The notes: generated by a model not told the origin, from the letters alone. A stretch of 34,859 nucleotides of DNA from Octopus sinensis (GCF_006345805.1 NW_021828051.1:1-34859); one strand, 5' to 3'. Positions 6,471 through 33,660 are shown, numbered from the stretch's first letter. A program made the numbers and translations.

Positions 6471-7190
6471 TCAGGAAATGCTGTCATTCCTCCTGCTAGT
6501 TCTCTGCCTTCTGTTAGAAAACCAATTGCGTATTGTGTCTTCTGTCTTGTCAAGATGAGTGGCCGTCATTTGAATGATATGTCTGTCAGGCCTTCTTGTA
6601 GTTTGAAAAATTAGTTCCAAATATGCTATATCATTCTCCATGAATGTTGTACGCCTTTTCCGATTCCTAAAACGCCTTGGATAGTGTTTGTCAGGGAGAC
6701 GGGAAAAGTCTTCACTGCGGACGGGATTGGCCGAATTGAGTATTTGTCGGTCGAGGATTTCTGCCAGACTGACCAGACTCGAATAGCCAAGTTTGCAGGA
6801 CTCGAATCTGCATATTGTAGTTTGTGATATTGTATTTCCGCCCTCATTTAATATTTCTGAAACTGTTTTTTGAGTTAATCCCATTTCCGTTCGTCGTATT
6901 CTAAAATCTCGACAAAAATTAGATATTAAAACATAACGCGACGACAATTCCGACGGAAAGTGATACTCCCGTCCTGTCTCAGGGATCTGTTGTCTAATAA
7001 AATGACATACATTTCCCCCCGTCTGATTCATCTGGAAGTATTGATCTGATCTTGACACATCACCTCTGTTGGGGATATTTGTGAAGGAAGAAAGATATCT
7101 CTGATTTGTATATAAATTGGAATTCCCTACAGAAGAGACATTTAGTGAATTATTAGGCAAGTTGTGGTTATAATGAGGGTTGTTGGCCAT
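6471..7190 (-). CDS. Divergent POU-domain homeobox transcription factor, 239 aa, no introns apparent
   Basis: POU-specific domain (FRIRRTEMGLTQKTV...SQTTICRFE) followed by a homeodomain (RKRRTTF...RNWFSNRRQR). Confidence 0.93.
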   Translation of the reverse strand: MANNPHYNHNLPNNSLNVSSVGNSNLYTNQRYLSSFTNIPNRGDVSRSDQYFQMNQTGGNVCHFIRQQIPETGREYHFPSELSSRYVLISNFCRDFRIRRTEMGLTQKTVSEILNEGGNTISQTTICRFESCKLGYSSLVSLAEILDRQILNSANPVRSEDFSRLPDKHYPRRFRNRKRRTTFMENDIAYLELIFQTTRRPDRHIIQMTATHLDKTEDTIRNWFSNRRQRTSRRNDSIS

Positions 7191-7318
7191 TGCCTGTCAA
7201 TTTGCAATGACTGGGGGAATTATACGCATTCGTCAATTTATACACATTTGTCCACTAATTTAATAACACGTTAATTCTAATCAGGAATACTGCTTTGATG
7301 TTAGCACAAATTAAGTGG

Positions 7319-9671
7319 TTAGTGAACTGCCTTCTCATTCTGGCGATGAGCTCGGACACAGCGAGACATGACAGGTGAATTGCGACTGATGGAATCGGTC
7401 ATGAAATAGTCACTCAATTTATTCAATCGACACTCAGGCAGTCTCCCCTCCACCCTTCTCTACAACTCACCAACACACCTCACAGTCTCACACATCTGCG
7501 ACACTATCGAATGGAAAGACGTGGTCATTGGACGACACTCCATCTGGCCTATCCCCGGACATAACTCGCCTATTCGCTGCCGGACTCCCCCCAATGTCTC
7601 ATAGGGCAGGTCCACACCCATCACCTCTGCCAGTGCCCGTACCACCAAAAAGTCCTCCCTCGCCTCTCCTGGAGCACTCACCCCCGGCCGACACTCCTGG
7701 TAACGCCCCTCCATGTTCACATACGTCCCCCTCTTCTCTGTATACGCTACACCAGGCAGAATGACGTCAGCAATCTCCGCTCCTCTGTCGCCATGGCAAC
7801 CTCACAATATATAAAGCAATCCAACCGAGGTACACAACCATACAATCATCAGGCAGCCCATCTCGTGTGGTGATGACGTCATCAGCCCCAGAGAGAAAGA
7901 GCAGGCGAAGATTGCCTCGATCAACAAAGTGATTGAACCCTCGATAGCCCAAGTCGAGTGCCCCAACCTGACTGGCCCTCTGCAAATAAGGAGAGGAATG
8001 CCTGCCTGGTGGACAAGGTTGAAAGCACAGGAATGACTGGAGGAGAGAGAGGCCAGTTTAAGTGAGAGAGAATACAAATCACGTGCAGTATTCTGGTCAT
8101 GTTGGAGAAGAGAAGAACCAAGCAAGACGACAGGCATTCGGGCATTGCGAAACCTGTGAGAAAAGGGGTGGTTTCCTGAGGCAATGTGGTGGAGAATAGT
8201 AATGGAATCCCCCAAATACTGCAATGACAGACCACCCAACCTCATACTCATAGTTCAAGTCCACCCTCGACCCCACCACGGCCACATGCGAATCCCCAGT
8301 CCTCCAACTTGTGCCATTAACAGTCAAAACAACCCCTTGCGGATACGACAGTTGAGGAGAGGGGCCTCCAGACGGGGATTGAAGCCCACAATGAGCACCA
8401 AGTCTGCCCTCTCGACTCCCTCTATGCCCACATTGAGGACATAACTCTCCCGGAAGTCAGCACTGCAGGGCAAACACTCTTCCGTGTACAAATTGTCACA
8501 GTCCAGTCGATTAAAGAGGTCTTTGAGGACAGCGAGTGTCTCCAAATCAGTAAATCTGCCGGCCAAAACAGCCATTTGGTGAGGGGGTGATTGAGTGGCC
8601 TGAAATGTGTGGAATGGGCACCCTGAGTGAGATGAGTTGGAGGACGTGAGGCCAGTGGGAGGGGCAGTGGGCTGTCATAGGAGTGACCAGTCGTTGGTGG
8701 TGGAGTGCGTCGTGGGCAAAACGAGCCTTGTCGTCCAACCACTCCTCGTTGATCTCCTCATTGAGTCTGGGGAGGATTCTGTGGACGACATGAGAGCGAG
8801 TATAGAGGAGAATATGAGAGCCGACAGCGTCCATAACGTCGATGGTCTCCACCCGTCTGGTGTAGTGGTGTGACATACCTCAACTCCCAGGGACGAGCAC
8901 GGAATGAGTGGGGGAGGGAGGTGAGTGCCCCCACTGGACATATGTCGATCAGGTTCCCCGATAGCTCGGAGGACAGGAGGGTGTGGACATACGTGCCTAT
9001 CTCCATGTCCCCACCTCGCCCTGTCGTCCCCAAGTCCTCCATTCCCCCTATTTCACTTGCAAATCTATTCATTAGCTAATTCTGTGACCGAACACATCTC
9101 GTGCAGTGAATACACCGAGTCATCACTGTCTTGACCAGAGGACTTATCTCCTTGTCCTCCACAGCCCTCTCATATCACCACACACTCACCTCTTTCTCTC
9201 ACTCATTCTACTTCTGTCACACCCGTACCCCATCGACTGGTCTTGCAGGTCACATTCCCCCGCCTGGTCACATATTGGACAGTCCAATGGGTGGTTCGCC
9301 AGGATAAACTCCATCACCCCCTCTCTTCCTTTATTTACACTTTCTACCTCGCTTCTTTCGTCTTGGAAGAATTCGTCAGCACACGCATTCCCTCACTCGC
9401 AGGCATGGCACACGACGCCACTGGTTTGGCACTCTTTTCTACTTCCACCAGGCACATTCGGCAGTTCCCCGCTATCGACAGGCGCTCGTGGTAACAGAAG
9501 CGGGGGATGTCCACGCCTGCCGCTGTGCACGCCTGCAGGATTGTGCTTCCCTGGGGGACTTTTACTGCTCTCTCGTTTATGAACAGTTCGATTTGAGAGG
9601 GCAATGTTGAGTATTCTAGTTTTAATACTTTTTCATTCACTTTTTCGCAAATGTCGTAATAAGCTTCGCAT
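7319..9671 (-). CDS. NDUFS1: NADH:ubiquinone oxidoreductase 75 kDa subunit, about 696 aa, 12 exons and 11 introns of 22-26 nt
   Basis: Start [14 protein letters not shown] is targeting-peptide-like. Motifs [54 protein letters not shown] and [10 protein letters not shown] are present. Introns: 9640-9616, 9347-9325, 9189-9167, 9088-9065, 8878-8857, 8621-8600, 8333-8308, 8240-8219, 8005-7980 (GC-AG), 7825-7801, 7483-7460. The spliced length, 2091 nt, is divisible by 3. Confidence 0.97.
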
Positions 9672-10559
9672 ACACCACAACACCAGCAATAGTTAAGAGA
9701 GTTGAAAAAATTAATGTCGTCAAAATTAATTTAAAATATTATTTAAAGCTGTAAATAACTAATAAATTATCTCGATATTTCGGACAGGTGTTTAAATTTA
9801 AAATCGTCACAATAGCTATTTTCCCTAAAAATTATTTAATTGAAATCAAAGTTAAATAAATGTCACAAGTAAACCTTGGCTTTGTTAGTTTTATTATTTG
9901 CGGTTGTATACTTCAAAGAATGGCTGCATGGAAAGTCACTAAAATTCTTCAAAAACATTCTAGAAAAATATATATTGATACAAATAAAGCAATCACATTT
10001 TAAGTAAGTTTCAACCTTAAAAATATAATAATTTAATAAAAAACATCAATTTCAAAAATCAAGTCAAAACAACAAATTAAACATATTTAAGCGAAACCAA
10101 CAAAAGAGTTTAAAAAACCAAAAAACTAAGAAAAGCTATTTTTTAAGTAGCTGGAGGATCGTCTAAAATATAATTTTATTTTTGTCCAAAAAACCGTTTT
10201 TACCATCTTTTTTGTAACCTTTTGATCTCCATTGCATCATTCTTGATCTTTTTCTTGGTTTCGAAGTGCAATTGGGCAATTGAATTTTTTATTTCTCGAT
10301 GTCCTCAATGTCCAATCACGTTTTTTGATTTTTTCAAATCCACGTATCGAGGGGGATCGGGATAAGCTTTTGTGCGGACCTGGTTCTCCCCTTTCTTCTT
10401 TTTTCCAATTCAGCCTCCATGAATTCTGTTAGAGATTTCGCAACGTGGCAAACCTCCGATCATTTTTATTAAATTTTTTGTGACTTTTTTGTTATAGTAT
10501 TTACGTGCTAAACCGGATTAGGTGGGGTGTTTGAATGAAAAGTAGCAGATTTGTGGGTT

Positions 10560-11181: not shown

Positions 11182-12137
11182 TTTTTATGTTTTTGGAATC
11201 TAATTTAGTTATATTTACTTTCTTTATTTTTAGACTATCGAAAACCACCACTAAAATTTTCAACGAAAATTCTTTTTGTTAAGTACTGCAACAAAGTCAT
11301 AAATAGGCAATAATATAAATTATATATCGTTTTCCATTATTAAAATTTTTTAGTTCCTAAATACTTTACTTTTCAACAGTTTCTAAAACTTAAAAATATC
11401 ACGATTAGAGGTATAAGGTGAACCATCTCAAATTGGCCAAACAAATCGACCCTTCATAATTTACTTTTATATTAGGAGAATTTCGCGTTTATTACAAGAC
11501 CTGTCAGAGTCCTTAACCTTGTGATGATGACGAGTTTTACTTTTTATTAAATGCGGTCGTGTCTGATGGCAATGATAAAGTTGATTTGTTAAGCCATTTA
11601 CTAGTGTGCCTATTCGCTATTTGTGACTCTTTACATGACATGGGTCCAGAATCCAGTCTCATTGGTCTTGCTCTGCTTTCTTACAAGGAATTAATAACAC
11701 GTTTTATTCATTGTGGAGTCCATGTTTGTCTCCTGACTGTTATTTAGTGCTATCGTGGAAGTGATTTGAAGTTTTTTTAGACGTCGACAAACTTGTCCAA
11801 TTATTCGAATTGCCTGTGTTTGTATTTAAGGAGTATGTGGACTGTAATTCGTGTAGACCTTAGGCTTAAATTGGTCAAGTCTTGTAGAATTGGGTCTCCT
11901 TTGAAATGTCTCTACGGTTTTTTGATGCCACAGACAAAATCTTTTGATACTCTTTACAGGCGATTGCAGTGTGTTCCACAGAATATGTCATCAGATGTTC
12001 CTGGTAGCGTTGATTCTGTAGAAATTGACTTTGACCAGCTAAAAAACATTTTCTATTTTCTAAAGATTAACGGACTTTAGTATTATTTTTGTGGAGAGTT
12101 TATTTTTCATAGAAATAGTTCTGCTTCTCATTTAAAA

Positions 12138-12470
12138 GGCCTCGTATGGGATGCAACTCGCTGGGACACCTTTTCTGCTGCTTCATCATTAACTTCGTGT
12201 GCTCTGGAGACTAAATCTGCAGCTAAGGAGGCTGAAGATTTAAAGCTATATCAAATATTCTGCTCTCTCGTCGAGGAGTTTTCCGTGGTGCCGATCGCGG
12301 CGGAGACGTCGGGTGCTCTCGGTCCAAAAACTGAAAAGTTCCTTCGCAAGCTCGGAGCCAAAATCTCAATGCGCCCCTCATGATCTTCGGTAGGCGGACT
12401 GGCTAATGCAACGGTTCTCGATTGCCATTATCCGGAGAAACAGTTTGTGGCAATCCGCCAGGCTACATAT
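12138..12470 (+). mobile_element. CRE-like non-LTR retrotransposon 3' fragment, a more divergent subfamily
   Basis: LVWDAT..DTFS...VVPIAAETSGALGPKTEKFLRKLG...WLMQRFSIAIIRRN, with frameshifts. Confidence 0.8.
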
Positions 12471-17519: not shown

Positions 17520-18387
17520 TCCAATTCATCTGTCGTGAGCCAGAGTTGATAAAGCCGTAATCAGCCGTGTCCGGACATTGGCTGATCCTGAGTTGCCAAT
17601 TTTTTCGATATGACTATGGGTTCTTTTCCACGATATTGATTTGCTCATAGAGAAATCCATAATTAAAATATCATCTGCGTAAATGACCATCTCCATGTTA
17701 GGGAGATCCACTTGAGGAATGTCGCACTACATATTCCCTCAGCCTTTTCCAAGAGAGGTCCTTGGATCGCGACAGATCCGTAACCAATATGTCGTCCGCA
17801 TAGATAATTAGTAGACTCTCCGGATTTTCTGGTTTCGGGATGTCGGCAACGTATAAGTTGAAAAGTAGAGGGCTCAGGACCGACCCTTGATGCACTCCTC
17901 TCCTTAGATTGATTGTATCCGAGGTCCGGTTACCACATCTGATAAAAGACTTTCGCATGTGTAAGAAATTCTCTACCCATTTAACAGTCCTTTGCCCCGG
18001 ATGGATACTGATGATCCTTTCCAGGAGGCCTAGGTGCCAAACGCTGTCGAACGCCTTTGAGATGTCCAGACAAACAGCTGTCATCCCCATCTTGTGTGTA
18101 AGGGCCCTCGAGATTTGCGTTTCCAGTTGGGCAAAGCAGTTTCCACAGGACTTCCCACGTCGGAAACCCCATTGTTCTTTAGCCAGGTAACCTGACTCCT
18201 CCACGAGAATAGATAATCTGTTAAAGATTATACGTTTTATGATTCTTGATATGGAGCAGATGAGACTTATGGGTCGGAAATTTTCTGCACGGTCTTTAGG
18301 TTTCTCTGCCTTTGGAATCATTCGTACCACGGTTTTCTTTTTCTTTCTTCCTTCATTCGGGACGTATCCAGTCTCCCAACTGGGCAT
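17520..18387 (-). mobile_element. Non-LTR (Jockey/I-like) reverse transcriptase remnant made of two joined fragments
   Basis: FRPISL, EQWGFRRGKS, LDISKAFDSVWH, GVHQGSVLSPLLFNLY and YADD, followed by a second YADD-containing piece (17526-17711). Confidence 0.92.
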
Positions 18388-18389
18388 TG

Positions 18390-19350
18390 AAAAGTATCGT
18401 TATTATCTTGACTAGGCTTATCGGGGCCTTTGTTTCAAAAAACCCTTTTACTACGGAATATATTGACATTCCAGTTGTACAGGTTTCCAATAATTCGACA
18501 AACAATAAATCCTCATTTAATACACATTCATTATCGAAATACTAAATTTTATTAAAACTTCGAAAATCTCACAAATCCCATTAAAACAGGTTTACTATCT
18601 ACAATGACGCTTTCATCAATTTGTAATGAAAACTTACTTCGCTTCAGTCTTTCAATGAGGATTTCCTTTACATTGTCACCCATTTCATCAATTCTTCGAC
18701 GAATCGGATCATTGCTATGCATTGCATACATCCGATATTATTACTTCCAGTGATGGAATTATTACATTTTCTGCGATAGTATGAGAACTGGAAGTTTTCG
18801 CAATAATTTCAGCAATTTTATAAGAAGCGATGTGCGCACCACAACTACATTAAATAAATGTTAAATAACCACCATGTACTGGCTTTGTGAATAACGATTT
18901 GATCGTTTTCTTATTTTCAAAATTGTATTTTAAATTTTGAAAATATTCAATCGGCTTTGACATTTTTATCCGGGTGCTTGCGTTTTAGATGATCCTGTAA
19001 TCGTGATGGCTTCATCTCCTCATTTGAAAGAAGAACATGAAAATAAGACAATAAGGCTGTTTTGTATCTTCAGTACTTTGAATAAAACCATATTTTAAAT
19101 ATTCGTTTTGATAATGACGACTTTTCTTATTGGAGCGAGAAAACATCTTATACTTAAAGAAAACAAGAATGTAAAAACAGCCTGCTATTTTAATATAAAA
19201 TTTAAGGATAAACACTATAGAAAAATATTAATAAATCTGAAACATTATTAAAATTAACATGTATAAATACTTGTATTATATTAAATTCGAATATTTTATT
19301 AAATGTATTATCGCCCCCCTGTACAAAATTTTCGCCCCTAGGGGGGCGAT
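18390..19350 (-). mobile_element. hAT Buster/ZBED5-like transposase remnant, 3'-truncated
   Basis: YQNEYLKYGFI, EEMKPSRLQDHLKRKHP, ASYKIAEIIAK..HTIAE and FSLQIDES, plus a subterminal GC palindrome CGCCCCTAGGGGGGCG near 19332. Confidence 0.85.
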
Positions 19351-19699
19351 TCAAAAATCTAAATGCTTCATAATTTATTAAAATGTCAAAACAAGAATCT
19401 TCTGAAGAGAAAGCCTGTCTGCACAGTTCATTTGTTTTCTTGATGATTAGAAGAGCTAATTTTAGAGATTGAAACGAGAAATAGCAATGAGATCTGTCAA
19501 TTATTACCTTCCCCCTCACAACCTAAACCAAAATTTTCTACCTCCTTAAATAAAAATAAATTTTAAAAATTTTATCCTCCTTAGATCTATCAAATCTATA
19601 TCTGATATCTTTAATTTGGAAGATTTGCAACATATGATTTTGCTCATCGCCAACCTTTAATGGTGTGGAAAAACGGCACACTTCCACATCTGACACTAC

Positions 19700-20340
19700 T
19701 TTACGAATAATTTCCCTTTTTATTCCGAAGTAATGCGCATGAAATGGTATTCCATGTTGTCTGTGGAAATAACCAGGTTACAGAATCGTCGTCGAAAGCC
19801 AACAAGTCTTGATAATCTTCAAGGCAAACTTCATTCGGATATTTGGCTCCGATAAAAATTTCGAATGGTATTTTTCTTGTTGTCTCGTGAATGGTGTTGT
19901 TGTACATGAAAACAATTCGTTTAAGGCAGGTTAAATACTGCCAATTTATTCTCTGAAGCATTGTGTTGACGAAATCCACCTTTTTATTGATTGATTGAAT
20001 CTTAATGTTAAATTACCTTGTATCTACCTTTCACTTGACCTTGTATCCAAGGGGCACGAGGTCTAACCAAATATCTGTTTAGTGCCGAACTCGATGCACA
20101 TCGCATGCATTTTAGAATTTTTAATTCTCTACCATTGTCGGTATGCAGAATTGTTGGTGGTTGATATGCATAAAAATTTTCCGAAACAATTCAGTAATCT
20201 CTTCTTCATGTTTTGTCTTTGGCAATATCAACAATTCCAAATTTGGAGAATGAGTCAATGACCACAAGAATCCATTCATTAATTTATGATTCTTACCCAA
20301 GAATAACCATCATTTTTTGAAGAATACCGCCTAAGATCTA
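19700..20340 (-). mobile_element. Integrase core (DDE, rve) remnant, Ginger/Gypsy-integrase-like
   Basis: WILVVIDSFSKF, PPTILHTDNGRE, RPRAPWIQG and MYNNTIHETTRKIPFEIF. Confidence 0.85.
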
Positions 20341-20518: not shown

Positions 20519-21716
20519 CAGTGGGCGGCAAAAAAAAATCCGGTTTTCTTATTTTTCGAATTTTTCAATATAAATTTATATTATTTTTTTTTAATTTAGT
20601 ATCATTTTGAAATGTAAATCGAGTATGTTTTTAATTTTAAGTATTTTTTTATTTTTCATAGAGATATCTTGAATTTAATTTTAAAATGCGCAAAAAAAAC
20701 TCGGTTTTTTTAATTATTGAGTCTTTTTATTCTCAAAAATTTGAAATTGTTGTCATTTTTGTTGTTGTTGGATGTCGTGTATTTCGTGTATCGTCTCAAA
20801 CGAACAATTGGGAATTATCTGAAACAAAAGGAAATATATTCACGTGTGTGTCAAAAAAAACCGTATCTGTCTAAAATTAATATCGAAAAACGATATTCCT
20901 TGTCAAAAAAATTTATCGCACTGAATGACGTCATGGAAATCAACTATTTTTAGTGATGAATGCTGTTTCGAATTTTTAATCACAAAAAAAAGGAATTTTG
21001 TTATAGGAAAAACAACACACGTCTAGAAAAATCGCACTTATCTCCAACTGTTAAATTTGGAGGGGGAAAAATAATGGTGTGGGGATGTTCGGGTATTATG
21101 GAGTAGGCAATCTAGTATTTATAAATGGAACTAACTATGAACTCAGCAACTTATGTGAACATATATCAAATAATCTGTGGGAGTCCGCTGCGAAAATGTG
21201 CTTGAATGAATTCATATTCCTCACAAGACATGGCTCCTCCCACACATCAAAGATCACGAAAGATTTCTTTGCCGAAAGAAGCGTCAAACTATTGGATTGG
21301 GCACCGCAATCGCCAGATTAAATCCAATAGAACATCTTTGGGCATATTTAAAAGTAAATTGTACGAAATCCTCCAAAAAATATGCATGAGCTGAAAGATA
21401 AAATTATCGAAATTTGGGAATAATGCCGAAAGATCTAATACAGAACTCATAAACAGCATGCCGAGAAGGGTGTACGATGTTTTATTTGCTAAAGGACGGC
21501 ATATTAAATATTATTTGACATTTTTTTTAAAAAACCGGGTTTTTTTTGCGCATTGTAAATTTAAATTGGAAAAATACTCTTGAAAAAATAATGAAAATAA
21601 TCAAAATAAAAAAATAAGAGTTACTTTTCACTAAATTTTAAGATTAAAAAAATATTATATCGCACAATATAAAAAATAGAGAAATTAGAAAACCGGATTT
21701 TTTTTGCGCCCCACTG
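20519..21716 (+). mobile_element. Tc1-family DNA transposon (IR/DR type), defective
   Basis: TA target duplications at 20517-18 and 21717-18, about 30-bp TIRs CAGTGGG(C)G(G)CAAAAAAAATCCGGTTTTCT, and inner repeats near 20688 and 21530. Transposase motifs IFSDE, VWGC and WAPQSPD..NPIE are frameshifted. Confidence 0.95.
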
Positions 21717-24284: not shown

Positions 24285-25928
24285 TTAACTGTTTTTGTTT
24301 ATTTTATTAAAACTTGGAATTAAGAATCTAAATTTTGAAACTATCACTGGAATTGGGAATGATATAATTAATATTCCAGAAAGAGAGCAGAAACCTGCCA
24401 CATAAACTCCAATGGCTGCTTATCCAACAGTTTTAATTGTAATAATAGCCCATCAAAATGCATCCGGAATGTTTACTGAGTTAATATTAACATTGGTTAA
24501 TTCTGCATAATAAATTAACGACAAATAAAAGAGAATTGCAGATGTGGACAACTCATTGACAGGAGAGGTTTACACCCTCTCTCTTGTCGCATCAGTGCCG
24601 GCAGGATCCCCAGGCACGCATCATTGAATGAAGTTGTAAAGCGCGCGCTTAACGCCGCTGGATTTCCCTCGATGTTAGAACCGATAGGACTAGACCGTGG
24701 AGATGAAAAACGCCCTGACGGGTCGACCTTATTCCCGTTCAGGAAGGGAATGGCACTCGTGTGGAATGTTACCTGCGTAGACTCATTTTCTTCATCATCT
24801 TTGGTTGACTCCGCTTCTCGTCCTGGATCTGCATCTGCCCTTGCCGAATCTAGGAAAACTGCTAAATATGCCTCTTTGACCGATACCTGCTGCTTCATTC
24901 CCCTGGCTTTCGAGACCAGTGGGATAATTGGACCCAAAGCCCTCAAACTCCTCTCAGAGATTGGTTTAATTATCTCGAGGAGGAGTCACGACAGTCGTGA
25001 AACGAGCTGGCTTTTTCAGCGGATATCGTTCGCGATATTACGTGGAAATTGCCTGTCCATCCGCTCGGCGACTCATCTAAATTAGTTAACTTCTCTATTT
25101 TACTTGTTATTTTACTTTAAAAAAAAGTCAAAAAAAAATTGTGATAATAAAATAAACCACCACTAGCGTAAAACAATCAAGTGAAGAAAAATAGATTGTC
25201 TCAGTATTTTTAGACAAGTTAAATTACTTAATAGCTTGAATATTCGAAATATTTGGATTATTAAACAAATCTAGTTAATCGTCTACAATATACTGTGTTT
25301 GATTAATCCATATAACTTCAAATAGAGTTTGTATGTATAGCGGTGAAATGTTTAAAAGTCAACTATAAATTTTCCAGAAAAACATTCGGAAATAATTTTA
25401 CAAATCAAAAATAAGCGAATTATCATTTCAATTGTAAAATATGTTGTATACAGAACTTTAGTTGCAAAAATATAATTAATTTTGGAAAGACTTTCCATGC
25501 TTATATCATTGTGTGGATAAGTTGTAGATATTTGCAAATTTTCAATGGAAAGCAAAATTAAGATTTGAAAATATTTGAATAATTTTTCCAGTGATAGAAA
25601 AATTAGGAAACTTTAAAGTCATCCACATAAATCTCAAAAAAAATTTCTGGGATATTTATTTCATAATATGGATCAGCATACATATTTTCGATGGATCGAC
25701 GATCAATTTCAAAAAATTCTACTTCTCTTGTAAATTTGTTTATATCGACGTTTCCTGCTTTTTTTGTTTGCGTCATTTTAGTAATAATTTATAATTCCTT
25801 CAAAACTGTCTCAATGTCGGTCAAAAAAATATTCGTTTTTAGTCATATCAAAATATTCGTTTAATTTCAAAAAATTTGTCAAGTTTGAATTTTCGTCTAC
25901 TGATGTTAATAGAGACTATATCTAGCAT
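24285..25928 (-). pseudogene. Shaker-like voltage-gated K+ channel (Kv) pseudogene, split by a retroelement
   Basis: T1 domain (VSINIS, KNEYFFDRH*DSFEGIINYY, NVDINKFTREVEFFEI), pre-S1 WMTLKFPNFS, S2 YFTIEMIIRL, S4 IFRIFKLL, pore IPDAF*WAIITIKTVG* and S6 GILIISFPIPVIVSKF. Contains stops, frameshifts and a deletion after TVG. Confidence 0.9.
24539..25136 (+). mobile_element. 5'-truncated CRE-like non-LTR retrotransposon with A-rich tail and candidate 5-bp TSD
   Basis: ORF contains RHASLNEVVKRAL, KRPDGSTLFPF, LVWNV, FIPLAFETSG and WLFQRISFAILRGN. AATTG flanks it at 24534-38 and 25137-41. Confidence 0.9.
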
Positions 25929-26783
25929 TCTTTATTATATTTAATACAAGCTATTATTAAATTGATGCTTCATATGTATTAGCGTCAAAACGCTATAGTA
26001 ACTGTCAATCAATAATTAATAACCCTAAAGTCAACATATTTACCAAGGAGATGAATAATACTCAATTGGTTTCCAGATATCGATTTCAAAAACTGGATTT
26101 GCCTTAATGAGTAAAAAATTAAACTTTATTAAAACAAAATTTAATTAAGGTTACACTATTTAATTGAAATTTTTCTCTTCCTTTTAAGGGAATAATTTGC
26201 TACTAGCTCTTCATTCTCTATCTTTCTGTCAGATAAAGTTGTTATATGTACCATAGCTTTAATTGAAGTGCCCGAAAGCATGGCAGTTCAAAAATTGCTC
26301 AGAAGTGTATTTTTCCTCAGATACCCTCGTCCCATGCTTGTGTTTAATTAACATACTTTAAGAGTCTTTTTTAGTATAAAAGATTGACCACTTAAAAATA
26401 ATGCAATTTATCATGGTTCTGGTCATCTTTTAATAAAATTTCAAAAGCTAACAATCTGTTATTTCTATTGATAAACACATTTAACTCAAGAATTGAGTAT
26501 TCGCATTGTAAAATTTGTCTTCACAAAGATTTTTTGAGAATCTATTTCTACTAAAAAAGTGACCACTTAATTAATTAATAAGCTCTCGTTGGAGACTTTG
26601 TGGACACGTCCCGAGGAAAGACTCAACATCCCCCAATGGAGGATTACTATCCCTTCTCTAATGAGGACACTACCCTCCCAATTGTTTTACAAAGTTCTCT
26701 GCACAACAATAAATATTATGGCTATCGTGAGAGTGCTAATAATTAATCAAATAATAATCGAACAAGCTGAGTATTAGACAGTC

Positions 26784-28427
26784 TTATTTCCCGCCCATAG
26801 ATTTGACAGTAATATTCCCGCCAACATCAGTAGTGACGTAGACAACCTCGGACGTGGCAGTCCACTCCCCCAGTCCTTCCAACCCCCACAGTAAACCACT
26901 CCCCTACCTCATCCCAGTACGACACCAACGGAGACACCTCCACCACTCTCGGCACACTCTCACACCCCTTTTTCCCCACCAAATACTTCCTGCTCAAAGC
27001 AAGGAAGGCCTCCCTCGCTGTGGACGGGTTCGCCGTCTCCGCCTTCCAACTGTTCTTCAACGGGGCAAATTCCTCTTCACGTGACACCTCCCAAACAGCC
27101 AACCGCCTATCATTTTCCCGCCAAAAATAAAACCGCGCGAAAGGCACACAATCAAAAATAAACTTTTCTAGTTTAATTCCGTTGGGGGTGTCGGGGATTA
27201 CTCGGAGACCGTCCTCGTCCACGAAGGGGATCTTCTTCCGTGCCACATGGTAGGGCAACTCATTCCTACCAATCACACAAAACACCACGTGAGGGTCGCC
27301 ACGATAAAATCCACAGTAAATAAATGCATACAAATATTTCCCGCCTTAAAATACAATGACCCATCCTCTGATCTCCTTCCTCGGTCAAAGTCAGAGATCT
27401 CGCTATATTCCACTATTCCGTAGGTCCCCTCTGCTGTCTTGCAGACTGACCCCAAAGCCTCCTGTGCCTCCCTTCTCTCAATGACCTTCACCCCACACTC
27501 GGCACCCCTCCTCATGAAGTACCCCAGGAAGACGGGATCCCCCACCTTGGCCAGAATATTGTCCACACAAAACACGTGCAAGTACTTCACACCTGTCTGG
27601 GTCATTTTCTCCACCAGGCCGTTCTCTTCAAGGGCGCGAAAAAAGTCGCCATTGCCATCTGTTTAATATTCCCGCCATTGGAGTACTTGGACTCAATGCG
27701 AGACTGTCTTTCCTGTCCAACAATAATTTCCCGCCAAAATCAAAGGCGGGAAAAAGCTGTTGTTCGAAAATAAAGACTTGAGAAGGCTTGAGTTGGAAAT
27801 AGTTGTTTTCCTCGAAATATAATTTGGTGAGTTCGTTGGTGAACTCGCTGGTCATGATGAACCAGGGAATGGAGACCTCCTTCCCGCCAAAGAGGTTCGC
27901 CAGTCGTTCCAGGCGGAGGATCCTTTCTGAGTGGAGTTGGAAGAGGGATTTGTTGGAAGGAAGGCCCACGTTGAACATACCTTTGGGGTAATCCACCCCT
28001 AAACGGGTCCCTTGGCCTCCTGCAAGAAGAGCAATGGCCACCTCCCCACTACATATTGCAGATAGACCTTAAATGTATTATTTTTTTAAATAATTATTAT
28101 GTAAATATTAATTAATAATTTTGTATAATTAATAAAAGTAATGATTTTAAATTAATTACCCATTTTTTTGTATTCCTCAATTTGCTGAGGAGTGGACTGA
28201 AAAACTCCACTCCATTCGTCGTGGCCCAAAGCTTGCAGGCCAGAATATGTTTTTTGTGAAAATTTAACAGCGTTTTGAAATTGTTGGTTTAATTCACTTA
28301 AATTTAAACTTTTTATTTGTGTAAATAAATTGTGCTTTTCTGTCTCTGACAAATCATTGTAGAAGGACAAGACATGTGCCTGGTTATTCTTTTCTAGGTC
28401 AGCCAACAAATCCTCTTTTGAAACCAT
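26784..28427 (-). CDS. UAP1: UDP-N-acetylglucosamine pyrophosphorylase; last exon frame uncertain (stop between 26774 and 26829)
   Basis: Motifs LLAGGQGTRLG, YPKG, IPWFIMTS, NGNGD, CVDNIL, VEYSEI, AGNI, KLEKFIFD, EFAPLKN and EVSPLVSY. Introns at 28159-28068 (92 nt), 27686-27659 (28), 27288-27266 (23), 27133-27107 (27) and one near 26907-26876. Confidence 0.95.
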
Positions 28428-28557
28428 ACAGAACAGAACTATTATATAATAAATTCAAATTTATATTTATTAAAAAATAAAATAAAAAAATAAATAATTA
28501 TATTTATTCAGGTGGTGCCTAATTACTATTCAGTCAAACACGTCATCAATTAAATAA

Positions 28558-29913
28558 TCAATATATATTATATTTTCCCTCCCCGAGTCTCCACAGTCGT
28601 TCGACCTGCTTCCTCCATGTGGGCACACTCCGGGGGATCCTGTCCACTGGACTGCTCTTCTGGGCACCCCTCCTCAGCCTCTCCTTCACGACCTCCTCCC
28701 CCAATTCCCTCCTGTCCTTATAACTATCCAAATATCTACAACAATCACACTCCTCTCACTTCCAGAATGACTTTTTGGCGGGAAATGACTTTTGGGGTGG
28801 TTGGTGGATTGGCGGGAAATCATACTCGTACACAGGCTCAGGCAACCCGAGTGTTTGGTGGAAGAAATCCCTCACGGACAAATCCCAGCACGTTTGGTGG
28901 AATGCCAACCCCACGGGACTCATCTCCTGGTATTTCTCCACCAACTTTTTTGAACAAAAAACACGTTTTTTAAGTAATTCACTTAAATATATAAATATTT
29001 ATTTACCGCCCTTTTTGGTTAACCACATCAAAGCGCGGGAAATCGATTTTTGAGTTATGTCGGTAGAGGACGTATACTATTCTGTGGTACCCTGTTCCAC
29101 GAGCTGGAAATGGAGGACAATAAGGCACAACTGATATCCCAGAGTTATTACTCTCAATATTTGAACTAAATATAATATATTAAAATTAATATATTATTTG
29201 TTAAATATATTTAAAAGTAATAAAATAATATTACTTTATCCAGTGGAGGACTTGTGTGTCTGTGCCTTCCAATAAATTACTGTCAAGTGAGGTCATAACC
29301 AGAGTGAAGAAATTGCCTAAATGTCCATATTTGGCCCAATCTATGCTGAAGAGTGGCTCAAACTGACACTACGAGTACTCAATCCTCACAAAGCCACCTC
29401 AGATGCCTTAATATAATTCCCGCGCTCCACTTTGAGTGCATAATTGTCATCAATCCTGTACTTGACAGAGATAGGCACACATGGAATGAATCCCGAGTCC
29501 CCGTACAGCCCCTTGAAGACGTCGTAGTGCAGTGCCATTGTGTGCAGCCTAGACAAGTCATCCTCTAAAGTTCCCGCTTATTTATAAAATCACGTGTTTT
29601 ACTCAATTCACTATTTTTTGGCGCAATTTTTGAATCACGTGTTTCACTTAATTCATTGTTTTTTGGCGCCATTTTTGATTGAGTGGGGAATGAATTGGTA
29701 ATGCCGATGTTATTGTAGACTGTGTTTTGGTGGGGGTATATTTCTGAGTGGTGAGTGGGGGGTACTTTCGAGTTGGTCTTGGAGGGAAGGGTCCCCTTCG
29801 TCCAGTAGAGTGTCACGGTATGAGGGACGGATTAGTCGGCCGAAATAGGAGACATTTCGATAACGAGACAGCACTCCTGATAAATGCACAGAATATGTCA
29901 CACGTAAAACCAT
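28558..29913 (-). CDS. MRPL38: Mitochondrial ribosomal protein mL38 (PEBP fold), 7 exons
   Basis: Spliced protein contains HYDVFKGLYGDSGFIPCV, FTLVMTSLD, VLHW, PYCPPFPARGTGYHR, PVGLAFHQTCWD, LPEPVYEY and KYLDSY. Introns are 22, about 29 (donor ambiguous), 29, 69, 25 and 24 nt. Confidence 0.9.
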
Positions 29914-29945
29914 TTACAATAAATATATATTTTTTTAAATAAATA

Positions 29946-31003
29946 CACCCCTCGACATTAAACTCTGGAAAATTAATAAATCGTCATTTTTATTATCAAA
30001 TTTAGAAAAAAACTTTTGACCATAATATTTTTTTCTATATTTATATATTTACAAAAGTTTTATAGACCTCGCTCTAGAAATGGAAGCCATCACTCAAAAA
30101 TCAATTTCCCCGCAAACAATGACCCGCAATTTAAATAAGAATGGTTTAATTGGAAGAGTAGCAAAGAAAAAACAATTGCTAAGTAAAAAAAACATACTCA
30201 AAAGATATGAAATATCGAAAATATTCGTTGGTATGTATGATGAAGGATGGAGATCAGTCATTTTTTCAGACGAGTGTACTTTTGAAGTGTATTATGCACC
30301 AAAAAGAAAAATAATATACCGAAAAAGGGGGAAATGAATTCAAAAATTCAAATTATCATCCAACTGTTAAGTGTGGTGGCAGCAAAATTATAGGGATGCT
30401 TTTCATATTTTGGAATGGGTTCGTTATGTTTCATCGATGAAAAAATAAACTCAGGAAAATATATAAACATTCTTGCTAACAATCTGGAAAAATCAGCCAT
30501 TAAAATGGGATTAAACAGCTTCATATTCCAGCATTTTCCTGCAAACAAAATAAATTTACTCGATTGGCCGGCACAATCCCCCGATATAAATCCCATTGAA
30601 CATATTTGGTCAAAAATTAAATATGAATTATCGAGGGATGATACAGAAAATCGACCAAAAAATAAACATCAACAAAAGGATAAAATATTAGAAATTTGGA
30701 ATAAAATTCCAATTGATTTTATTCGAAAATTAATAAATTAGATGAAAACTCGTAGTTTAGAGTTATATAAATCTAGAGGAAAGCATATTCCTAACTGATA
30801 TTTTATTTTTGACATTTGTCCGGAATTTTGTGTCTTAAAAAAATCGGTTTTTGCTTTATTCTCAATATTTTAAAAAGATTTATGATAAATATTATAAAAT
30901 TAAAAAATATAGATGATATTAGCATGGTTAAGTTTTTAATTTCGTAAAATTGATAATAAAAATGACGATTTATTAACTGTCCGGATTTTAATGTCGAGGG
31001 GTG
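29946..31003 (+). mobile_element. Tc1-family DNA transposon, defective, N-terminally deleted
   Basis: TA TSDs at 29944-45 and 31004-05, TIRs CACCCCTCGACATTAAA...AATAAATCGTCATTTTT, and transposase motifs WRSVIFSDE and WPAQSPDINPIEHIW. Confidence 0.95.
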
Positions 31004-31190
31004 TATATAACAAATAGTTTTCTGTATATTTTATTATTTTTATAACAAATCGAGTAACCTGTTAATACCTATATTATCACACAAGTCAGCTGTGTGCCTT
31101 CATTAACTGATTAATGTCAGTTATTGACACATTTGTCCTAATAAAGTGTGATAATCCTCCAGTTATTATTACAGTAAAAGAAAAGGCACA

Positions 31191-33660
31191 TTATTCAATC
31201 AAAAGTTCATCATTTTCATCAATAGTATTCCCGTCGATATCCCTACCAATATTAATATATATAACTCGATTGTAAAGGCAGGCCGAGAGTAATTACTAAA
31301 ACTGGCATTGTTGAAATCCCTCATAAGCCTGTCCATTGAGTTATCCTCCCACACTACCACTGGCAGGTGGACTGGCTGGGAATGCAAGGAAGGGGGATCC
31401 ACACTACCCAATCACACATAACTCAACTCGTAGTCCAATCCTTCAGGGTAGCACATCCCTGGCACAGAAGACGGGAAAATATGGTGGGCATGTGAAATGA
31501 ATAATTCAATAATATTGGTAATATCATTATAAAATTGCCTCTCAGATTCAAAATAGGAGTTGAAGAGCATTCCAAACACAGTCCCCAGGTTTTTACTGGT
31601 CATTTCCCCCACGGACGAATTGTCGGCCACCCTAAAGTGACCCTCTCTCCTTACTCTGCAAGAAAATGGAACAAATATCTCAATCTAAGCCAGGCAGTGC
31701 GGTCAAGTGACCACACAATCTCTCTGATCTGCCCGACCGAGTCATCCTTGAGGACTGTGGCCATATCCTTGAAGGTGGAAAGAGGGATGGGGGGTGTCCT
31801 GAACCCCCTGAGGTATGCCTTGAAGACAGAGGCATAAGTATTGACATTGGAGTCCTCCCACTCAATGCCTCCAATGGTGAGGGGGAGTACCTCCCTCGAG
31901 ACAGGCCATCATTCTGGCCACTTTTTTCTGTGCTCCGGGAATGCGGAAGAGTCCCTTCGAACTGATGCCCAGTCTCCTGATGTGTTTGATACAAATGAGC
32001 ATGACTGGGTGGATATCCTCGTTATTACACTTCTAGGAATCACTGGGTGGAGTACATCCTCGATCTGTCCTTCAAACATTAGGAATTTGGCAGTCCCCAT
32101 CCGGCGGCAAAGATCAAAGAGGGAGTCAAAACGGGATAATGAACTGCACTCATTAATCCCATTCCTCACCTCGATAGTTCGGGGATGACGTCATAGTCAC
32201 GTGCTATGATTATTGAGTATATTTTTATTTCATAGTCCAGTTTAGTGAGGTACCACTGAGTGGAGAAGAGGTGGAAGTAGGCTCTCCCGTAGTTTCTGAG
32301 CAATTGGAGCACACTGGCATTGTTTGTGTTCTCTTTAAAGGATTTTAGAGAACTTTCGAGAGTAACAATTTCCTATAATAATTAATTTGTATATTTTATA
32401 AGTATATAAAAATATATATTTACATTTTGTTCTTTATTTAAAAATTGAATTCTTAGACTTTTAAGCAACCTGACTTTATTGCCCATCTCCTTGGTCAAGT
32501 CGGCGAAGGATTCCTGAATGTTCTACCACGTTAAACCACAAGACCACTTCCAGGGATATTGGCGGGATTTCATAAGCCTCAAAATGTATTGGCGGGAAAT
32601 CCTCACTGTCGAAACCAGCCGAGAAACAGGCATCAAGGGAAGCCCTCGTCAGCCCATTAAAGGACACATGTTTCTGAGTGGTCTCAAAAATGGTGTCAAC
32701 AAGCCCGGAGACCTGTTCCCGCAGTCCAGTGTTGATTAACTGACCAATAATAATATATTCCCACATTTAATAGACTGGTGAAGCATTTGGTCTTGTAGTA
32801 CGTCAGGAGGTTGTTTAGACTGAATGTTGTGATTGCACATTTTATGTAATGTTCTAGAATTTTCCAGTTTGTGCTCGTCAGTTTAATTATAATCTAAATA
32901 TTCCCGCCAATTTACTTTTTTATTTTTTTGGTCATCCAATGTAAATTTTTGTCGATAACGATTAGAAGTGGCCATCAAATGAGTGCAGTTTTGAATGTTC
33001 TACACATAGACATGCCACAATACATCATCGAGTTTCTTAATGTTGGAAATAATTTCCATCCTGGCCATGTCAGTCACATCGGTGACCTAATTTGAGTGAA
33101 AAGTGACCCACAATGTCCTGGATGATGGATTGGTGTTCCACCAGCACGTGCAAATGGTCCCCGATTGGCTGAATGCACTCCTTCAACAACTTGGCTTCCC
33201 TTTCGTACTTTTCGACAGCAAAGTTGGTCATGAGGACTCCAATTTTGGAGAATTCAGGGGACACCTCGCTGTTTCGACTGGAATATACTTAGGGGACTAC
33301 TAGTCATCAGCCACCAGGTCTGAGGGGGAGTAGTTCTTAATGTTCAGAAGTGACTTTAAATAGTCCTGGCTGCGCTCACTCAGGCTATTTAAGGCACATT
33401 TCCACTGATCACCGATTTTGATGACCCAGTCCACCTTACTGCACAGATATTCGTGCATGTTGTCCATTTTCCCCACGTTTACTGTTGTTTTCTGCCCCAC
33501 CAGGAATACCTTGGGATATGCCTTGTATTCTCTTCACGTCTGACCTTCCAAACGACTGCATGCTCTATCCAATTGCGCTGTTTATTCTTATTTATACCTG
33601 CGGTTATTAATACACATTACCCTCTTCTGCTTTTAATTCAATTAAAATATTTCCTATCAT
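31191..33660 (-). CDS. RhoGAP-domain protein with an N-terminal helical (possibly BAR) region; many 22-25-nt introns; start codon tentative
   Basis: GAP motifs KGLFRIPGA (arginine finger), YASVFKAYLR, LRYLFHFLAEV and MTSKNLGTVFG. Upstream exons join in frame through tiny GT-AG introns, for example 32915-32894 and 33300-33278. Confidence 0.85.

What the first reader, a model, noticed from the sequence alone, without database searches (positions are those of the whole stretch)
27338..32722. The motif appears written into protein-coding codons, possibly at the cost of amino-acid changes
Exonic copies use consistent codon combinations: F-P-A, F-G-G-K (twice) and A-G-N in UAP1; D-F-P-P, F-P-A-K, D-F-P-R and R-G-N in MRPL38; D-F-P-P-I and I-P-P-I in the RhoGAP. 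Against recalled human sequences, UAP1 LPAMSFDGKI reads FPAFDFGGKL here and MRPL38 IDFSED reads IDFPRF, so some substitutions create the motif. This resembles dual-coding duons or the protein footprint of bacterial DNA-uptake sequences.
Basis: partly seen in the sequence, partly recalled or inferred. Interest (0 to 1): 0.7.

Follow-up and report, generated by a model that had tools for sequence, protein, structure and literature searches.

The report
E2F-type motif embedded in exons
Three neighbouring animal genes carry a dense array of E2F-type DNA-binding sites inside their exons, their 22-29-base introns and their untranslated ends, and the codons, and probably a few amino acids, have been bent to spell the site.

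Summary
GGCGGGAA/TTCCCGCC occurs 12 times in the window (0.42 expected), and every copy lies in 26788-32908, in three tandem minus-strand genes (RhoGAP, MRPL38, UAP1).

Shuffling synonymous codons gives 0.3 expected copies in UAP1 against 4 observed (P<=1e-4). MRPL38 has 4 cores against 0.3-0.7, and RhoGAP 2 against 0.04-0.15. An NDUFS1 control gene has none.

Orthologue alignments show that G150, A197, G201 and K321 in UAP1, and P193/R194 and A271 in MRPL38, are lineage-specific and complete the motif. The neighbouring residues (GK, P, AGN, RGN, FPP) are conserved. The amino-acid signal is modest: the motif ranks 2nd and 5th of 168 composition-matched control 8-mers.

The extended consensus WTTGGCGGGAAAW is the published E2F/DP preference, and TTTCGCGC and TGGCGCC variants co-occur with it. 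Orientation relative to transcription is mixed, so the signal acts on DNA. Two further copies sit in ancestral introns of 27-28 nt.

The best reading is a homotypic E2F-type site array under DNA-level selection that overlaps coding sequence. No binding data exist, and no second locus of this genome could be examined.

The parts
26827..28427 (-). UAP1 (UDP-GlcNAc pyrophosphorylase) coding region. It has 5 exons. The introns are 28159-28068 (92 nt, AT-rich), 27686-27659 (28 nt), 27288-27266 (23 nt) and 27133-27107 (27 nt).
   Evidence: Model built. It gives E 5e-120 to human and mouse AGX1 over residues 5-428 and 47% identity to 120 orthologues. All four intron positions are shared with Owenia UAP1.
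26788..26822 (-). Two GGCGGGAA copies (26788-26795 and 26815-26822), 27 nt apart, starting 5 nt after the UAP1 stop codon (3' UTR or downstream).
27107..27141 (-). The 27-nt UAP1 intron 4, GTTTTATTTTTGGCGGGAAAATGATAG, holds TTTTTGGCGGGAAAA. Directly upstream lies an exonic TTTCGCGCGG (F-A-R; TTCGCGC at 27135-27141).
   Evidence: The 15-mer is identical to the preferred E2F8 DNA used for the crystal structure (PMC4686757). Removing the intron restores the FA(R/K)(R/K) alignment to AGX1.
27338..27345 (-). Exonic copy AAG GCG GGA AAT (K321-A-G-N). A-G-N is conserved, and K321 supplies the 5' G.
   Evidence: 36 of 120 orthologues are compatible at this site.
27634..27640 (-). Exonic TTTTCGCGCC (F-F-R-A), a classical TTTSGCGC-type E2F variant.
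27659..27686 (-). The 28-nt UAP1 intron 2, GTACTCCAATGGCGGGAATATTAAACAG, carries the motif at 27669-27676.
   Evidence: The intron is required to keep the reading frame, and its position is shared with Owenia.
27718..27762 (-). An imperfect palindrome in UAP1 exon 2 made of two inverted copies: TTT CCC GCC (F195-P-A, 27745-27752) and TTT GGC GGG AAA (F200-G-G-K, 27728-27735). It encodes EQQLFPAFDFGGKLLL.
   Evidence: I6, 18-nt arms. As RNA it folds at -22.3 kcal/mol, z = -6.2. A197 and G201 are lineage-specific.
27881..27888 (-). Exonic copy TTT GGC GGG AAG (F149-G150-G-K). G150 is not Gly in any of 120 orthologues.
28558..29913 (-). MRPL38 (mL38) coding region with 6 exons. The introns are 29765-29565 (201 nt), 29397-29369 (29), 29234-29166 (69), 29006-28982 (25) and 28759-28736 (24).
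   Evidence: Model built. It gives E 2e-41 to human mL38 over residues 58-287. The N-terminal exon is supported only by its presequence-like composition.
28775..28820 (+). Two identical TTGGCGGGAAAT 12-mers, 34 nt apart, in the penultimate coding exon of MRPL38 (28981-28760). On the sense strand they read D-F-P-P-I and S-F-P-A-K. They lie 350-385 nt upstream of the UAP1 ATG.
   Evidence: (D8).
29035..29041 (+). Exonic GCGGGAA core, on the sense strand GAT TTC CCG CGC TTT (D-F-P-R-F). P193 and R194 are novel or inserted relative to orthologues.
   Evidence: 0 of 94 orthologues compatible.
29417..29423 (-). Exonic GCGGGAA core, GAG CGC GGG AAT (E-R-G-N). G and N are conserved, and R is the commonest residue in orthologues.
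   Evidence: 28 of 94 compatible.
29565..29765 (-). MRPL38 intron 1. It holds a 45-nt tandem duplication (29588-29677) in which each unit has CACGTG plus TTTTGGCGC(A/C)A, and AAGCGGGAAC (29571-29577) next to the acceptor.
31413..32766 (-). RhoGAP-domain gene (tentative model, seven exons, tiny introns of 22-26 nt plus one of 102 nt). The 5' and 3' ends are uncertain.
   Evidence: model. Pfam RhoGAP E 3.9e-26 over residues 193-327. The N-terminal exons have no alignable orthologue.
32559..32599 (+). TATTGGCGGGATTTC and TATTGGCGGGAAATC, 30 nt apart, in the first modelled RhoGAP exon. On the sense strand they read E-I-P-P-I and D-F-P-P-I.
   Evidence: (D2).
32716..32722 (-). GCGGGAA core in the RhoGAP first exon (CTG CGG GAA, L-R-E).
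32900..32910 (-). TTGGCGGGAAT in AT-rich sequence 135 nt upstream of the modelled RhoGAP ATG.

Best explanation
The motif is a binding site for an E2F-family (E2F/DP or atypical E2F7/8-like) winged-helix factor. About 20 such sites form a homotypic array over two sub-regions, MRPL38+UAP1 (26788-29670) and the RhoGAP 5' end (32560-32910).

The genes are packed head to tail, with only about 130 nt between the MRPL38 stop and the UAP1 ATG. Their introns have shrunk to 22-29 nt, and the flanking DNA is AT-rich and full of transposons. The sites have therefore been placed wherever the sequence could take them: 3' UTR, ancestral tiny introns and exons.

In exons they were installed on peptides that were already almost compatible (G-K, P-x-F, A-G-N, R-G-N, F-P). 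This was done by choosing particular synonymous codons and, at several sites, by one amino-acid replacement.

Shown: the enrichment, the clustering, the codon-level bias, the lineage-specific residues, the match to the E2F consensus, and the mixed orientation. Inferred: that a protein binds, that it is an E2F, and that the array regulates transcription of these genes. For example, the MRPL38 3'-exon copies may serve as UAP1 upstream elements, and the RhoGAP copies as a promoter-proximal cluster.
For: - Enrichment and clustering. TTSSCGS has 35 hits against 14.2 expected, and 31 of them lie in the cluster.
- Consensus WTTGGCGGGAAAW. It equals the E2F2-DP1 SELEX preference (T)TTGGCGGGAA(A) and the E2F8 site TTTTTGGCGGGAAAA (PMC4686757).
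- The two other known E2F site types, GGCGCC and (T)TTCGCGC, occur in the same cluster and nowhere else in the window.
- No similarity beyond about 12-16 nt between copies, so this is not a transposon.
- Both orientations relative to transcription occur (8 G-rich sense, 4 C-rich sense among the 8-mers), so the element acts on DNA, not RNA.
- Codon-level excess and the permuted-motif control.
- Amino-acid footprint.
- Copies in two ancestral introns of 27-28 nt.
- Roughly twice the density in non-coding as in coding parts of the cluster: my estimate from the positions and the models is about 5 copies in 1.3 kb against 7 in 3.6 kb. This is as expected if coding constraint limits placement.
- A second factor-like palindrome, TGACGTCA, is also embedded in exons of NDUFS1 and RhoGAP. 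This suggests that exon-embedded sites are a habit of this genome.
Against: - There is no binding, expression or transcription-start data.
- The presence of E2F/DP genes in this genome is untested.
- Ten sites lie 550-1640 nt downstream of the UAP1 ATG, which is not where E2F sites usually act. No downstream same-strand gene was found to claim them.
- The three genes are not classical cell-cycle targets.
- Only one 35-kb window was available, so it is unknown whether the motif marks promoters genome-wide.
- The amino-acid-level signal is modest once composition is controlled.
Confidence: 0.55

Rival explanations
1. The array is a DNA-level signal for something other than transcription. It could be a replication or amplification control element, a chromatin-domain or insulator array, or a tag linked to the somatic genome rearrangement and extrachromosomal circles reported in dicyemids. 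It would be read by an E2F-like or an unrelated protein.
For: - The sites cover whole gene bodies and a 3' end rather than promoters.
- The three genes are functionally unrelated.
- Tiny introns, 36% GC and high repeat content fit a dicyemid.
- Dicyema circular DNAs are reported to carry recurrent 12-20-bp 'signal' motifs roughly once per 874 bp (PMC6543705).
- From general knowledge, E2F-RB is known to cooperate with ORC at Drosophila chorion amplification origins.
Against: - The sequences of the Dicyema circle motifs are given only in a figure and could not be compared.
- The organism is not identified.
- Nothing in the window marks an origin or a breakpoint.
- The RhoGAP sub-cluster looks like an ordinary 350-nt promoter-proximal cluster.
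Confidence: 0.2
2. The copies are by-products of a sequence-specific mutational or insertional process rather than selected sites. Candidates are footprints of a mobile element, templated repair or biased gene conversion.
For: - Local clustering next to a Tc1/mariner insertion (29940-31009).
- A 45-nt tandem duplication carries two sites.
- An extended palindrome at 27718-27762.
- The MRPL38 D-F-P-R-F site lies in a short insertion relative to orthologues.
Against: - The UAP1 exonic copies and three of the four MRPL38 exonic copies align to orthologues without indels and differ by point substitutions.
- The transposon's 70-nt terminal repeats lack the motif.
- Copies share only the 12-16-nt core.
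- The intron copies sit in ancestral introns.
- A neutral process would not keep a CpG-containing 8-mer in CpG-depleted exons (o/e 0.52-0.66).
Confidence: 0.08
3. The motif works in the RNA, for example as a splicing enhancer for ultra-short introns, a protein-binding site or a hairpin.
For: - Seven of eight UAP1 copies are G-rich on the sense strand.
- Two tiny introns carry the motif centrally.
- The inverted pair folds into a -22.3 kcal/mol hairpin.
Against: - MRPL38 and RhoGAP carry the opposite strand in their mRNAs.
- At least nine other tiny introns of the same genes lack the motif.
- One copy lies upstream of the RhoGAP ATG in AT-rich DNA.
Confidence: 0.05
4. The pattern is chance plus codon usage or amino-acid composition.
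For: Composition-matched control 8-mers also show some excess of compatible peptides in these proteins.
Against: Dinucleotide shuffles, synonymous shuffles, permuted motifs, the NDUFS1 control and unremarkable G/P/A codon usage.
Confidence: 0.02

Closest known systems
E2F/DP and E2F7/8 binding sites (TTTSGCGC; (T)TTGGCGGGAA(A))
   Same: The core and flanks are identical, including an exact TTTTTGGCGGGAAAA. The GGCGCC and TTCGCGC variants co-occur. Copies come in pairs, inverted or direct, 17-34 nt apart.
   Different: Classical sites are one to a few copies within about 200 nt of the start of cell-cycle genes. Here about 20 sites spread over 1-3 kb of gene body, tiny introns and 3' end of UAP1, MRPL38 and a RhoGAP.
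Duons / exonic transcription-factor sites and exonic enhancers (Stergachis et al. 2013, recalled from general knowledge; plant examples PMC6790085, listed but not read)
   Same: A factor recognition motif overlaps codons, and codon choice is biased towards the motif.
   Different: Duons were defined by footprints and by weak genome-wide statistical trends. Here a single motif is repeated many times in single genes, with a strong local signal and visible amino-acid replacements, but no occupancy data.
Proteome footprint of bacterial DNA uptake sequences (PMC2817400; listed, abstract only)
   Same: A short DNA motif selected for a DNA-level function is accommodated in coding regions by particular peptides and reading frames, preferentially at tolerant positions.
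   Different: Uptake sequences are spread genome-wide, serve DNA uptake in competent bacteria and have a preferred orientation. This motif is confined to 6 kb of an animal locus.
Homotypic clusters of transcription-factor binding sites
   Same: Many copies of one site lie within a few kb.
   Different: Such clusters are normally non-coding. This one is more than half exonic.

Membership tests
E2F-family binding site | Sequence matches the experimentally defined E2F/DP or E2F8 preference | tested here: met
   There are 12 GGCGGGAA copies, and 9 match TTGGCGGGAAA with at most one mismatch (0.68 expected). One copy is an exact TTTTTGGCGGGAAAA. The consensus comes from PMC4686757.
E2F-family binding site | The site variants known for the family (GGCGCC, TTTSGCGC) are found with it | tested here: met
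   TTGGCGC(C) at 29618 and 29663, and TTCGCGC at 27135 and 27634. The only GGCGCC in the window is in the cluster.
E2F-family binding site | Promoter-proximal position in cell-cycle or growth genes | tested here: inconclusive
   The RhoGAP copies lie at -135 to +205 of the modelled ATG, and the MRPL38 copies at +250 to +500. Ten UAP1 copies lie at +546 to +1639. Transcription starts are unknown.
E2F-family binding site | Occupied by E2F/DP in vivo, and E2F/DP genes present in the genome | not testable with these tools
   Only a 35-kb window is available. No close relative is in the protein collection.
Duon (dual-use codons) | A factor motif overlaps codons of a verified reading frame | tested here: met
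   The UAP1 and MRPL38 frames are verified against solved structures. The codons are listed.
Duon (dual-use codons) | Codon choice departs from synonymous expectation in favour of the motif | tested here: met
   4 against 0.3 (P<=1e-4), 4 against 0.3-0.7 (P<=5e-4), and 2 against 0.04-0.15.
Duon (dual-use codons) | Protein footprint on the DNA (DNase or ChIP) | not testable with these tools
   No functional data.
DNA uptake sequence | Genome-wide, roughly even distribution in a naturally competent bacterium | tested here: not met
   All copies lie within 6.1 kb and none in the other 28.7 kb. The host is a metazoan with spliceosomal introns.
Transposon-, MITE- or introner-derived repeat | Copies share extended sequence, terminal repeats or target duplications, and intron copies are novel insertions | tested here: not met
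   Similarity is limited to 12-16 nt. The motif-bearing introns are at positions shared with an annelid.

The most novel reading that the evidence does not exclude
In this ultra-short-intron animal genome, cis-regulatory or other DNA-level signals are systematically housed inside exons. A locus-scale array of E2F-type sites is imposed on whole gene bodies of unrelated neighbouring genes, strongly enough to change conserved amino acids. It might act as a domain-level control element, for example for selective replication or amplification, or for retention during the somatic genome rearrangements described for dicyemids, rather than as ordinary promoters.
Probability: 0.12. Interest if true: 0.85.

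Novelty: new variant of a known kind. Interest (0 to 1): 0.58.

Why it matters
Whether transcription-factor sites inside exons are really selected, and whether they constrain proteins, has been disputed since the duon proposal, because the genome-wide signals in mammals are weak. Here one recognisable motif is repeated so densely in single genes that the effect is visible gene by gene. Codon choice is shifted more than tenfold, and residues that are otherwise nearly invariant (UAP1 Cys197 to Ala, Asp/Glu201 to Gly) are replaced by exactly the residue that the motif needs.

If this pattern is general in this genome, which has 22-29-nt introns and transposon-rich AT-rich spacers, it would be a natural system for measuring the trade-off between regulatory and protein coding. 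It would also show how regulation is organised when non-coding space around genes collapses.

Tried and rejected
- Looking up the source genome or relatives by exact protein failed. The best UAP1 relative is 47% identical, and the MRPL38 and RhoGAP word searches gave one hit each. No sister-species DNA could therefore be compared and no genome-wide test run.
- The RhoGAP N-terminal exons could not be aligned to any orthologue. Pfam found nothing in them or in upstream ORFs. The RhoGAP amino-acid test was dropped and the position of its 5' end remains uncertain.
- The site-by-site orthologue compatibility is not used as proof, because sites were chosen for having the motif.
- The compatible-peptide count looked decisive until the permuted-motif control showed similar excesses for a few other G-rich 8-mers. 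It is reported as modest support only.
- CACGTG is enriched in the window but not beyond synonymous expectation in the CDSs.
- Literature searches for the motif string and for exonic E2F sites found nothing about such arrays.
- The Dicyema circle motifs are not given as text.
- Rejected ideas: a transposon-derived repeat, an RNA-level element, and novel motif-carrying introns.

Full report
**What is in the window.** The window is animal DNA. It has GC-rich exons (about 47-55% GC) in AT-rich, transposon-laden spacers.
- On the minus strand it encodes a POU protein (6474-7196) and NDUFS1 (about 7400-9730).
- At the right end are three tandem genes: a RhoGAP-domain gene (about 32766 to 31413), MRPL38 (29913 to 28558) and UAP1 (28427 to 26827).
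- A Tc1/mariner-like element with 70-nt terminal repeats (29940-31009) separates RhoGAP from MRPL38.
- Most introns are 22-29 nt, and a few AT-rich ones are 69-201 nt. Introns this short are reported only for Dicyema japonicum and myxobolid myxozoans (PMC13644364).
- The GC content and repeat load fit D. japonicum (36.7% GC, 49% repeats; PMC6736024). The absence of any relative closer than 47% fits too. The organism is nevertheless not proven.

**The motif.** 'The motif' is GGCGGGAA/TTCCCGCC.
- It occurs 12 times against 0.42 expected. The 7-mer core occurs 16 times against 1.9. Every copy lies between 26788 and 32908.
- It is the commonest GC-rich 7-mer and 8-mer of the window.
- Aligning the copies gives WTTGGCGGGAAAW, with no similarity beyond 12-16 nt, so it is a short site rather than a repeat element.
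- This is the published preference of E2F2-DP1, (T)TTGGCGGGAA(A). The copy at 27113-27127 is exactly the E2F8 crystal DNA TTTTTGGCGGGAAAA (PMC4686757).
- The other known E2F site types occur in the same cluster. TTTCGCGC-type sites are at 27135 and 27634. TTTTGGCGC(C/A)A occurs twice in a 45-nt tandem duplication in MRPL38 intron 1, next to CACGTG boxes.
- With the degenerate pattern TTSSCGS, 31 of 35 window hits fall in the cluster.

**Where the copies sit.**

| Gene | Location | Copies |
|---|---|---|
| UAP1 | Exonic 8-mers | 27881, 27745, 27728, 27338 |
| UAP1 | Exonic TTCGCGC variants | 27634, 27135 |
| UAP1 | Introns of 28 and 27 nt | 27669, 27115 |
| UAP1 | Just after the stop codon | 26815, 26788 |
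| MRPL38 | Exonic 8-mers | 28811, 28777 |
| MRPL38 | Exonic 7-mer cores | 29417, 29035 |
| MRPL38 | Intron 1 | Three E2F-type sites |
| RhoGAP | First modelled exon | 32591 (8-mer), 32561 (one mismatch), 32716 (7-mer) |
| RhoGAP | 135 nt upstream of the ATG | 32901 |

UAP1 exon 1 and intron 1 have no copy.

All four UAP1 introns are at positions shared with the annelid Owenia fusiformis. The motif was therefore written into ancestral introns that have since shrunk. It was not brought in by new insertions.

**Is the exonic presence more than chance?**
- I held each protein fixed and randomised synonymous codons three ways: own-gene permutation, NDUFS1 usage and pooled usage, 20,000 replicates each.

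| Gene | Observed | Expected | P |
|---|---|---|---|
| UAP1 (8-mers) | 4 | 0.28-0.31 | <=1e-4 |
| MRPL38 (7-mer cores) | 4 | 0.32-0.67 | <=5e-4 |
| RhoGAP (7-mer cores) | 2 | 0.04-0.15 | 0.0004-0.004 |
| NDUFS1 (529 verified codons) | 0 | 0.02 (8-mer), 0.19 (7-mer) | - |

- Of 168 permutations of the motif's letters, the real one occurs 7 times in the three CDSs. The runner-up occurs 3 times and the mean is 0.28.
- General codon usage for Gly, Pro and Ala does not differ from NDUFS1. Both CCG and both CGC codons of MRPL38 are inside motif copies.

**Amino-acid level, UAP1.** Against 120 UAP1 orthologues:
- G151, K152, P196, G202, K203, A322, G323 and N324 are the conserved residues.
- G150 is T/Y/F/C/H elsewhere.
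- A197 is Cys in 106 of 120 and Ala in 10.
- G201 is D/E/N in 113 of 120.
- K321 is N/S/R elsewhere.
- These four are lineage-specific, and each is the residue the 8-mer requires.

**Amino-acid level, MRPL38.** Against 94 mL38 homologues:
- R-G-N and F-P-P are ancestral-like.
- P193/R194 and A271 are novel.

**Amino-acid level, the pattern.** The motif was installed on nearly compatible conserved peptides by one replacement each.

**Amino-acid level, how strong the signal is.**
- An unbiased count of motif-compatible peptides gives 5 in UAP1 against an orthologue mean of 1.06 (1 of 120 reaches 5). MRPL38 has 6 against 1.37 (0 of 94).
- A control with permuted motifs shows that a few other G-rich 8-mers have similar excesses. 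The real motif ranks 2nd of 168 in UAP1 and 5th of 168 in MRPL38, about +2.6 sd in each.
- I therefore rate the amino-acid footprint as real but modest, and partly confounded by composition.
- The site-wise orthologue compatibilities are ascertainment-biased and only illustrative.
- No functional cost has been shown.
- The RhoGAP sites could not be tested, because that region has no alignable orthologue.

**DNA or RNA?** The G-rich strand is the sense strand in 7 of 8 UAP1 copies and in the copy upstream of RhoGAP. The C-rich strand is sense in MRPL38 and in the RhoGAP exon. At least nine other tiny introns lack the motif. This argues for a DNA-level function.

One peculiarity remains. The inverted pair in UAP1 exon 2 is part of a longer imperfect palindrome (27718-27762) that would fold at -22.3 kcal/mol in the mRNA (z = -6.2).

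**Mechanism.** The best-supported reading is a homotypic array of E2F-type sites maintained by selection on the DNA. It spills into exons because the genes abut (about 130 nt between MRPL38 and UAP1), the introns are minimal and the spacers are AT-rich transposon debris.
- The RhoGAP sub-cluster (350 nt around the modelled start) and the MRPL38 intron-1 and exon-2 sites look promoter-proximal.
- The two copies in the penultimate coding exon of MRPL38 (28777, 28811) lie 350-385 nt upstream of the UAP1 ATG and could be UAP1 upstream elements.
- The ten sites 0.55-1.6 kb inside and just beyond UAP1 are not explained by any neighbouring start I could find. This is the main weakness, and it leaves room for a non-transcriptional, domain-level role.
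- Motif density is about twice as high in the non-coding as in the coding parts of the cluster. This is my estimate from the positions and the gene models. It is as expected if coding constraint limits placement.
- Exons are CpG-depleted (o/e 0.52-0.66) while spacers are not, yet the CpG-containing motif persists. This also argues for maintenance.

**A second exon-embedded motif.** The CRE palindrome TGACGTCA occurs 4 times against 0.27 expected. Three copies are in exons, encoded as (x)-D-V-I: NDUFS1 at 7762 and 7874, and RhoGAP at 32186. The synonymous expectation is 0.39 (P = 0.004). Exon-embedded factor-like sites may therefore be a general habit of this genome.

**Comparison and novelty.**
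- Functionally this is a case of dual-use codons, with the kind of proteome footprint described for bacterial uptake sequences (PMC2817400).
- It is not an uptake sequence: the distribution and host tests fail.
- It is not a transposon-derived repeat.
- As an E2F site it passes the sequence tests. Occupancy and the presence of the factor are untestable here, and the positional criterion is only partly met.
- I file it as a new variant of a known kind: an unusually dense, more than half exonic, locus-scale E2F-type array with a gene-by-gene visible coding footprint.

**Verdict.** Confidence in the E2F-type regulatory array is 0.55. Interest is 0.58.

Noticed in passing
27107-27133, 27266-27288, 27659-27686, 28736-28759, 28982-29006, 29369-29397, 31632-31654, 31869-31890, 32005-32030, 32144-32169, 32523-32547: These are GT-AG introns of only 22-29 nt, next to a few AT-rich introns of 69-201 nt. 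Introns this short are reported in animals only for Dicyema japonicum and myxobolid myxozoans, which narrows the source organism.
   Followed up: partly
7762-7769, 7874-7881, 20926-20933, 32186-32193: The full CRE palindrome TGACGTCA occurs 4 times against 0.27 expected. Three copies are in exons, encoded as D-V-I (two in NDUFS1, one in RhoGAP), against 0.39 expected from synonymous shuffles (P 0.004). This may be a second exon-embedded site.
   Followed up: partly
whole window, e.g. 27078, 27286, 27573, 29591, 29636, 32198, 33145, 34850: The E-box CACGTG occurs 15 times against 2.85 expected, with 8 copies in the last 8 kb. It is not beyond synonymous expectation within the CDSs.
   Followed up: partly
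29588-29677: A 45-nt tandem duplication (89% identical) lies in MRPL38 intron 1. Each unit carries CACGTG and TTTTGGCGC(A/C)A.
   Followed up: yes
29940-31009: A Tc1/mariner-like element with 70-nt terminal inverted repeats (89%) and a broken transposase frame is inserted 27 nt upstream of the MRPL38 ATG. The MRPL38 promoter must lie within the element, beyond it, or inside the gene.
   Followed up: partly
27718-27762: A coding-exon palindrome extends beyond the two motif copies (outer arms CAACA/TGTTG). The predicted mRNA hairpin folds at -22.3 kcal/mol, z = -6.2.
   Followed up: partly
28160-28427 versus 26827-28067: UAP1 exon 1 is only about 33% GC and carries no motif. The remaining UAP1 exons are about 50% GC.
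   Followed up: no
exons versus spacers, per-kb table: CpG observed/expected is about 0.4-0.8 in gene-rich kilobases and about 1.0 or more in AT-rich spacers. This could mean gene-body methylation or codon-level CpG avoidance.
   Followed up: no
12081-12380, 17701-18399, 19541-20309, 21055-21580, 24519-25082: Transposon-derived ORFs are present: a reverse transcriptase, integrase-like pieces, a second Tc1/mariner transposase, and two copies of a Cys-rich element-associated ORF. About half of the window appears to be repeat-derived.
   Followed up: no
33073-33533 and 26571-26774: Exon-like ORFs have no detectable domain. The first pair lies upstream of the modelled RhoGAP start and may be further 5' exons of that gene. 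The second is a plus-strand ORF convergent with the UAP1 3' end.
   Followed up: partly
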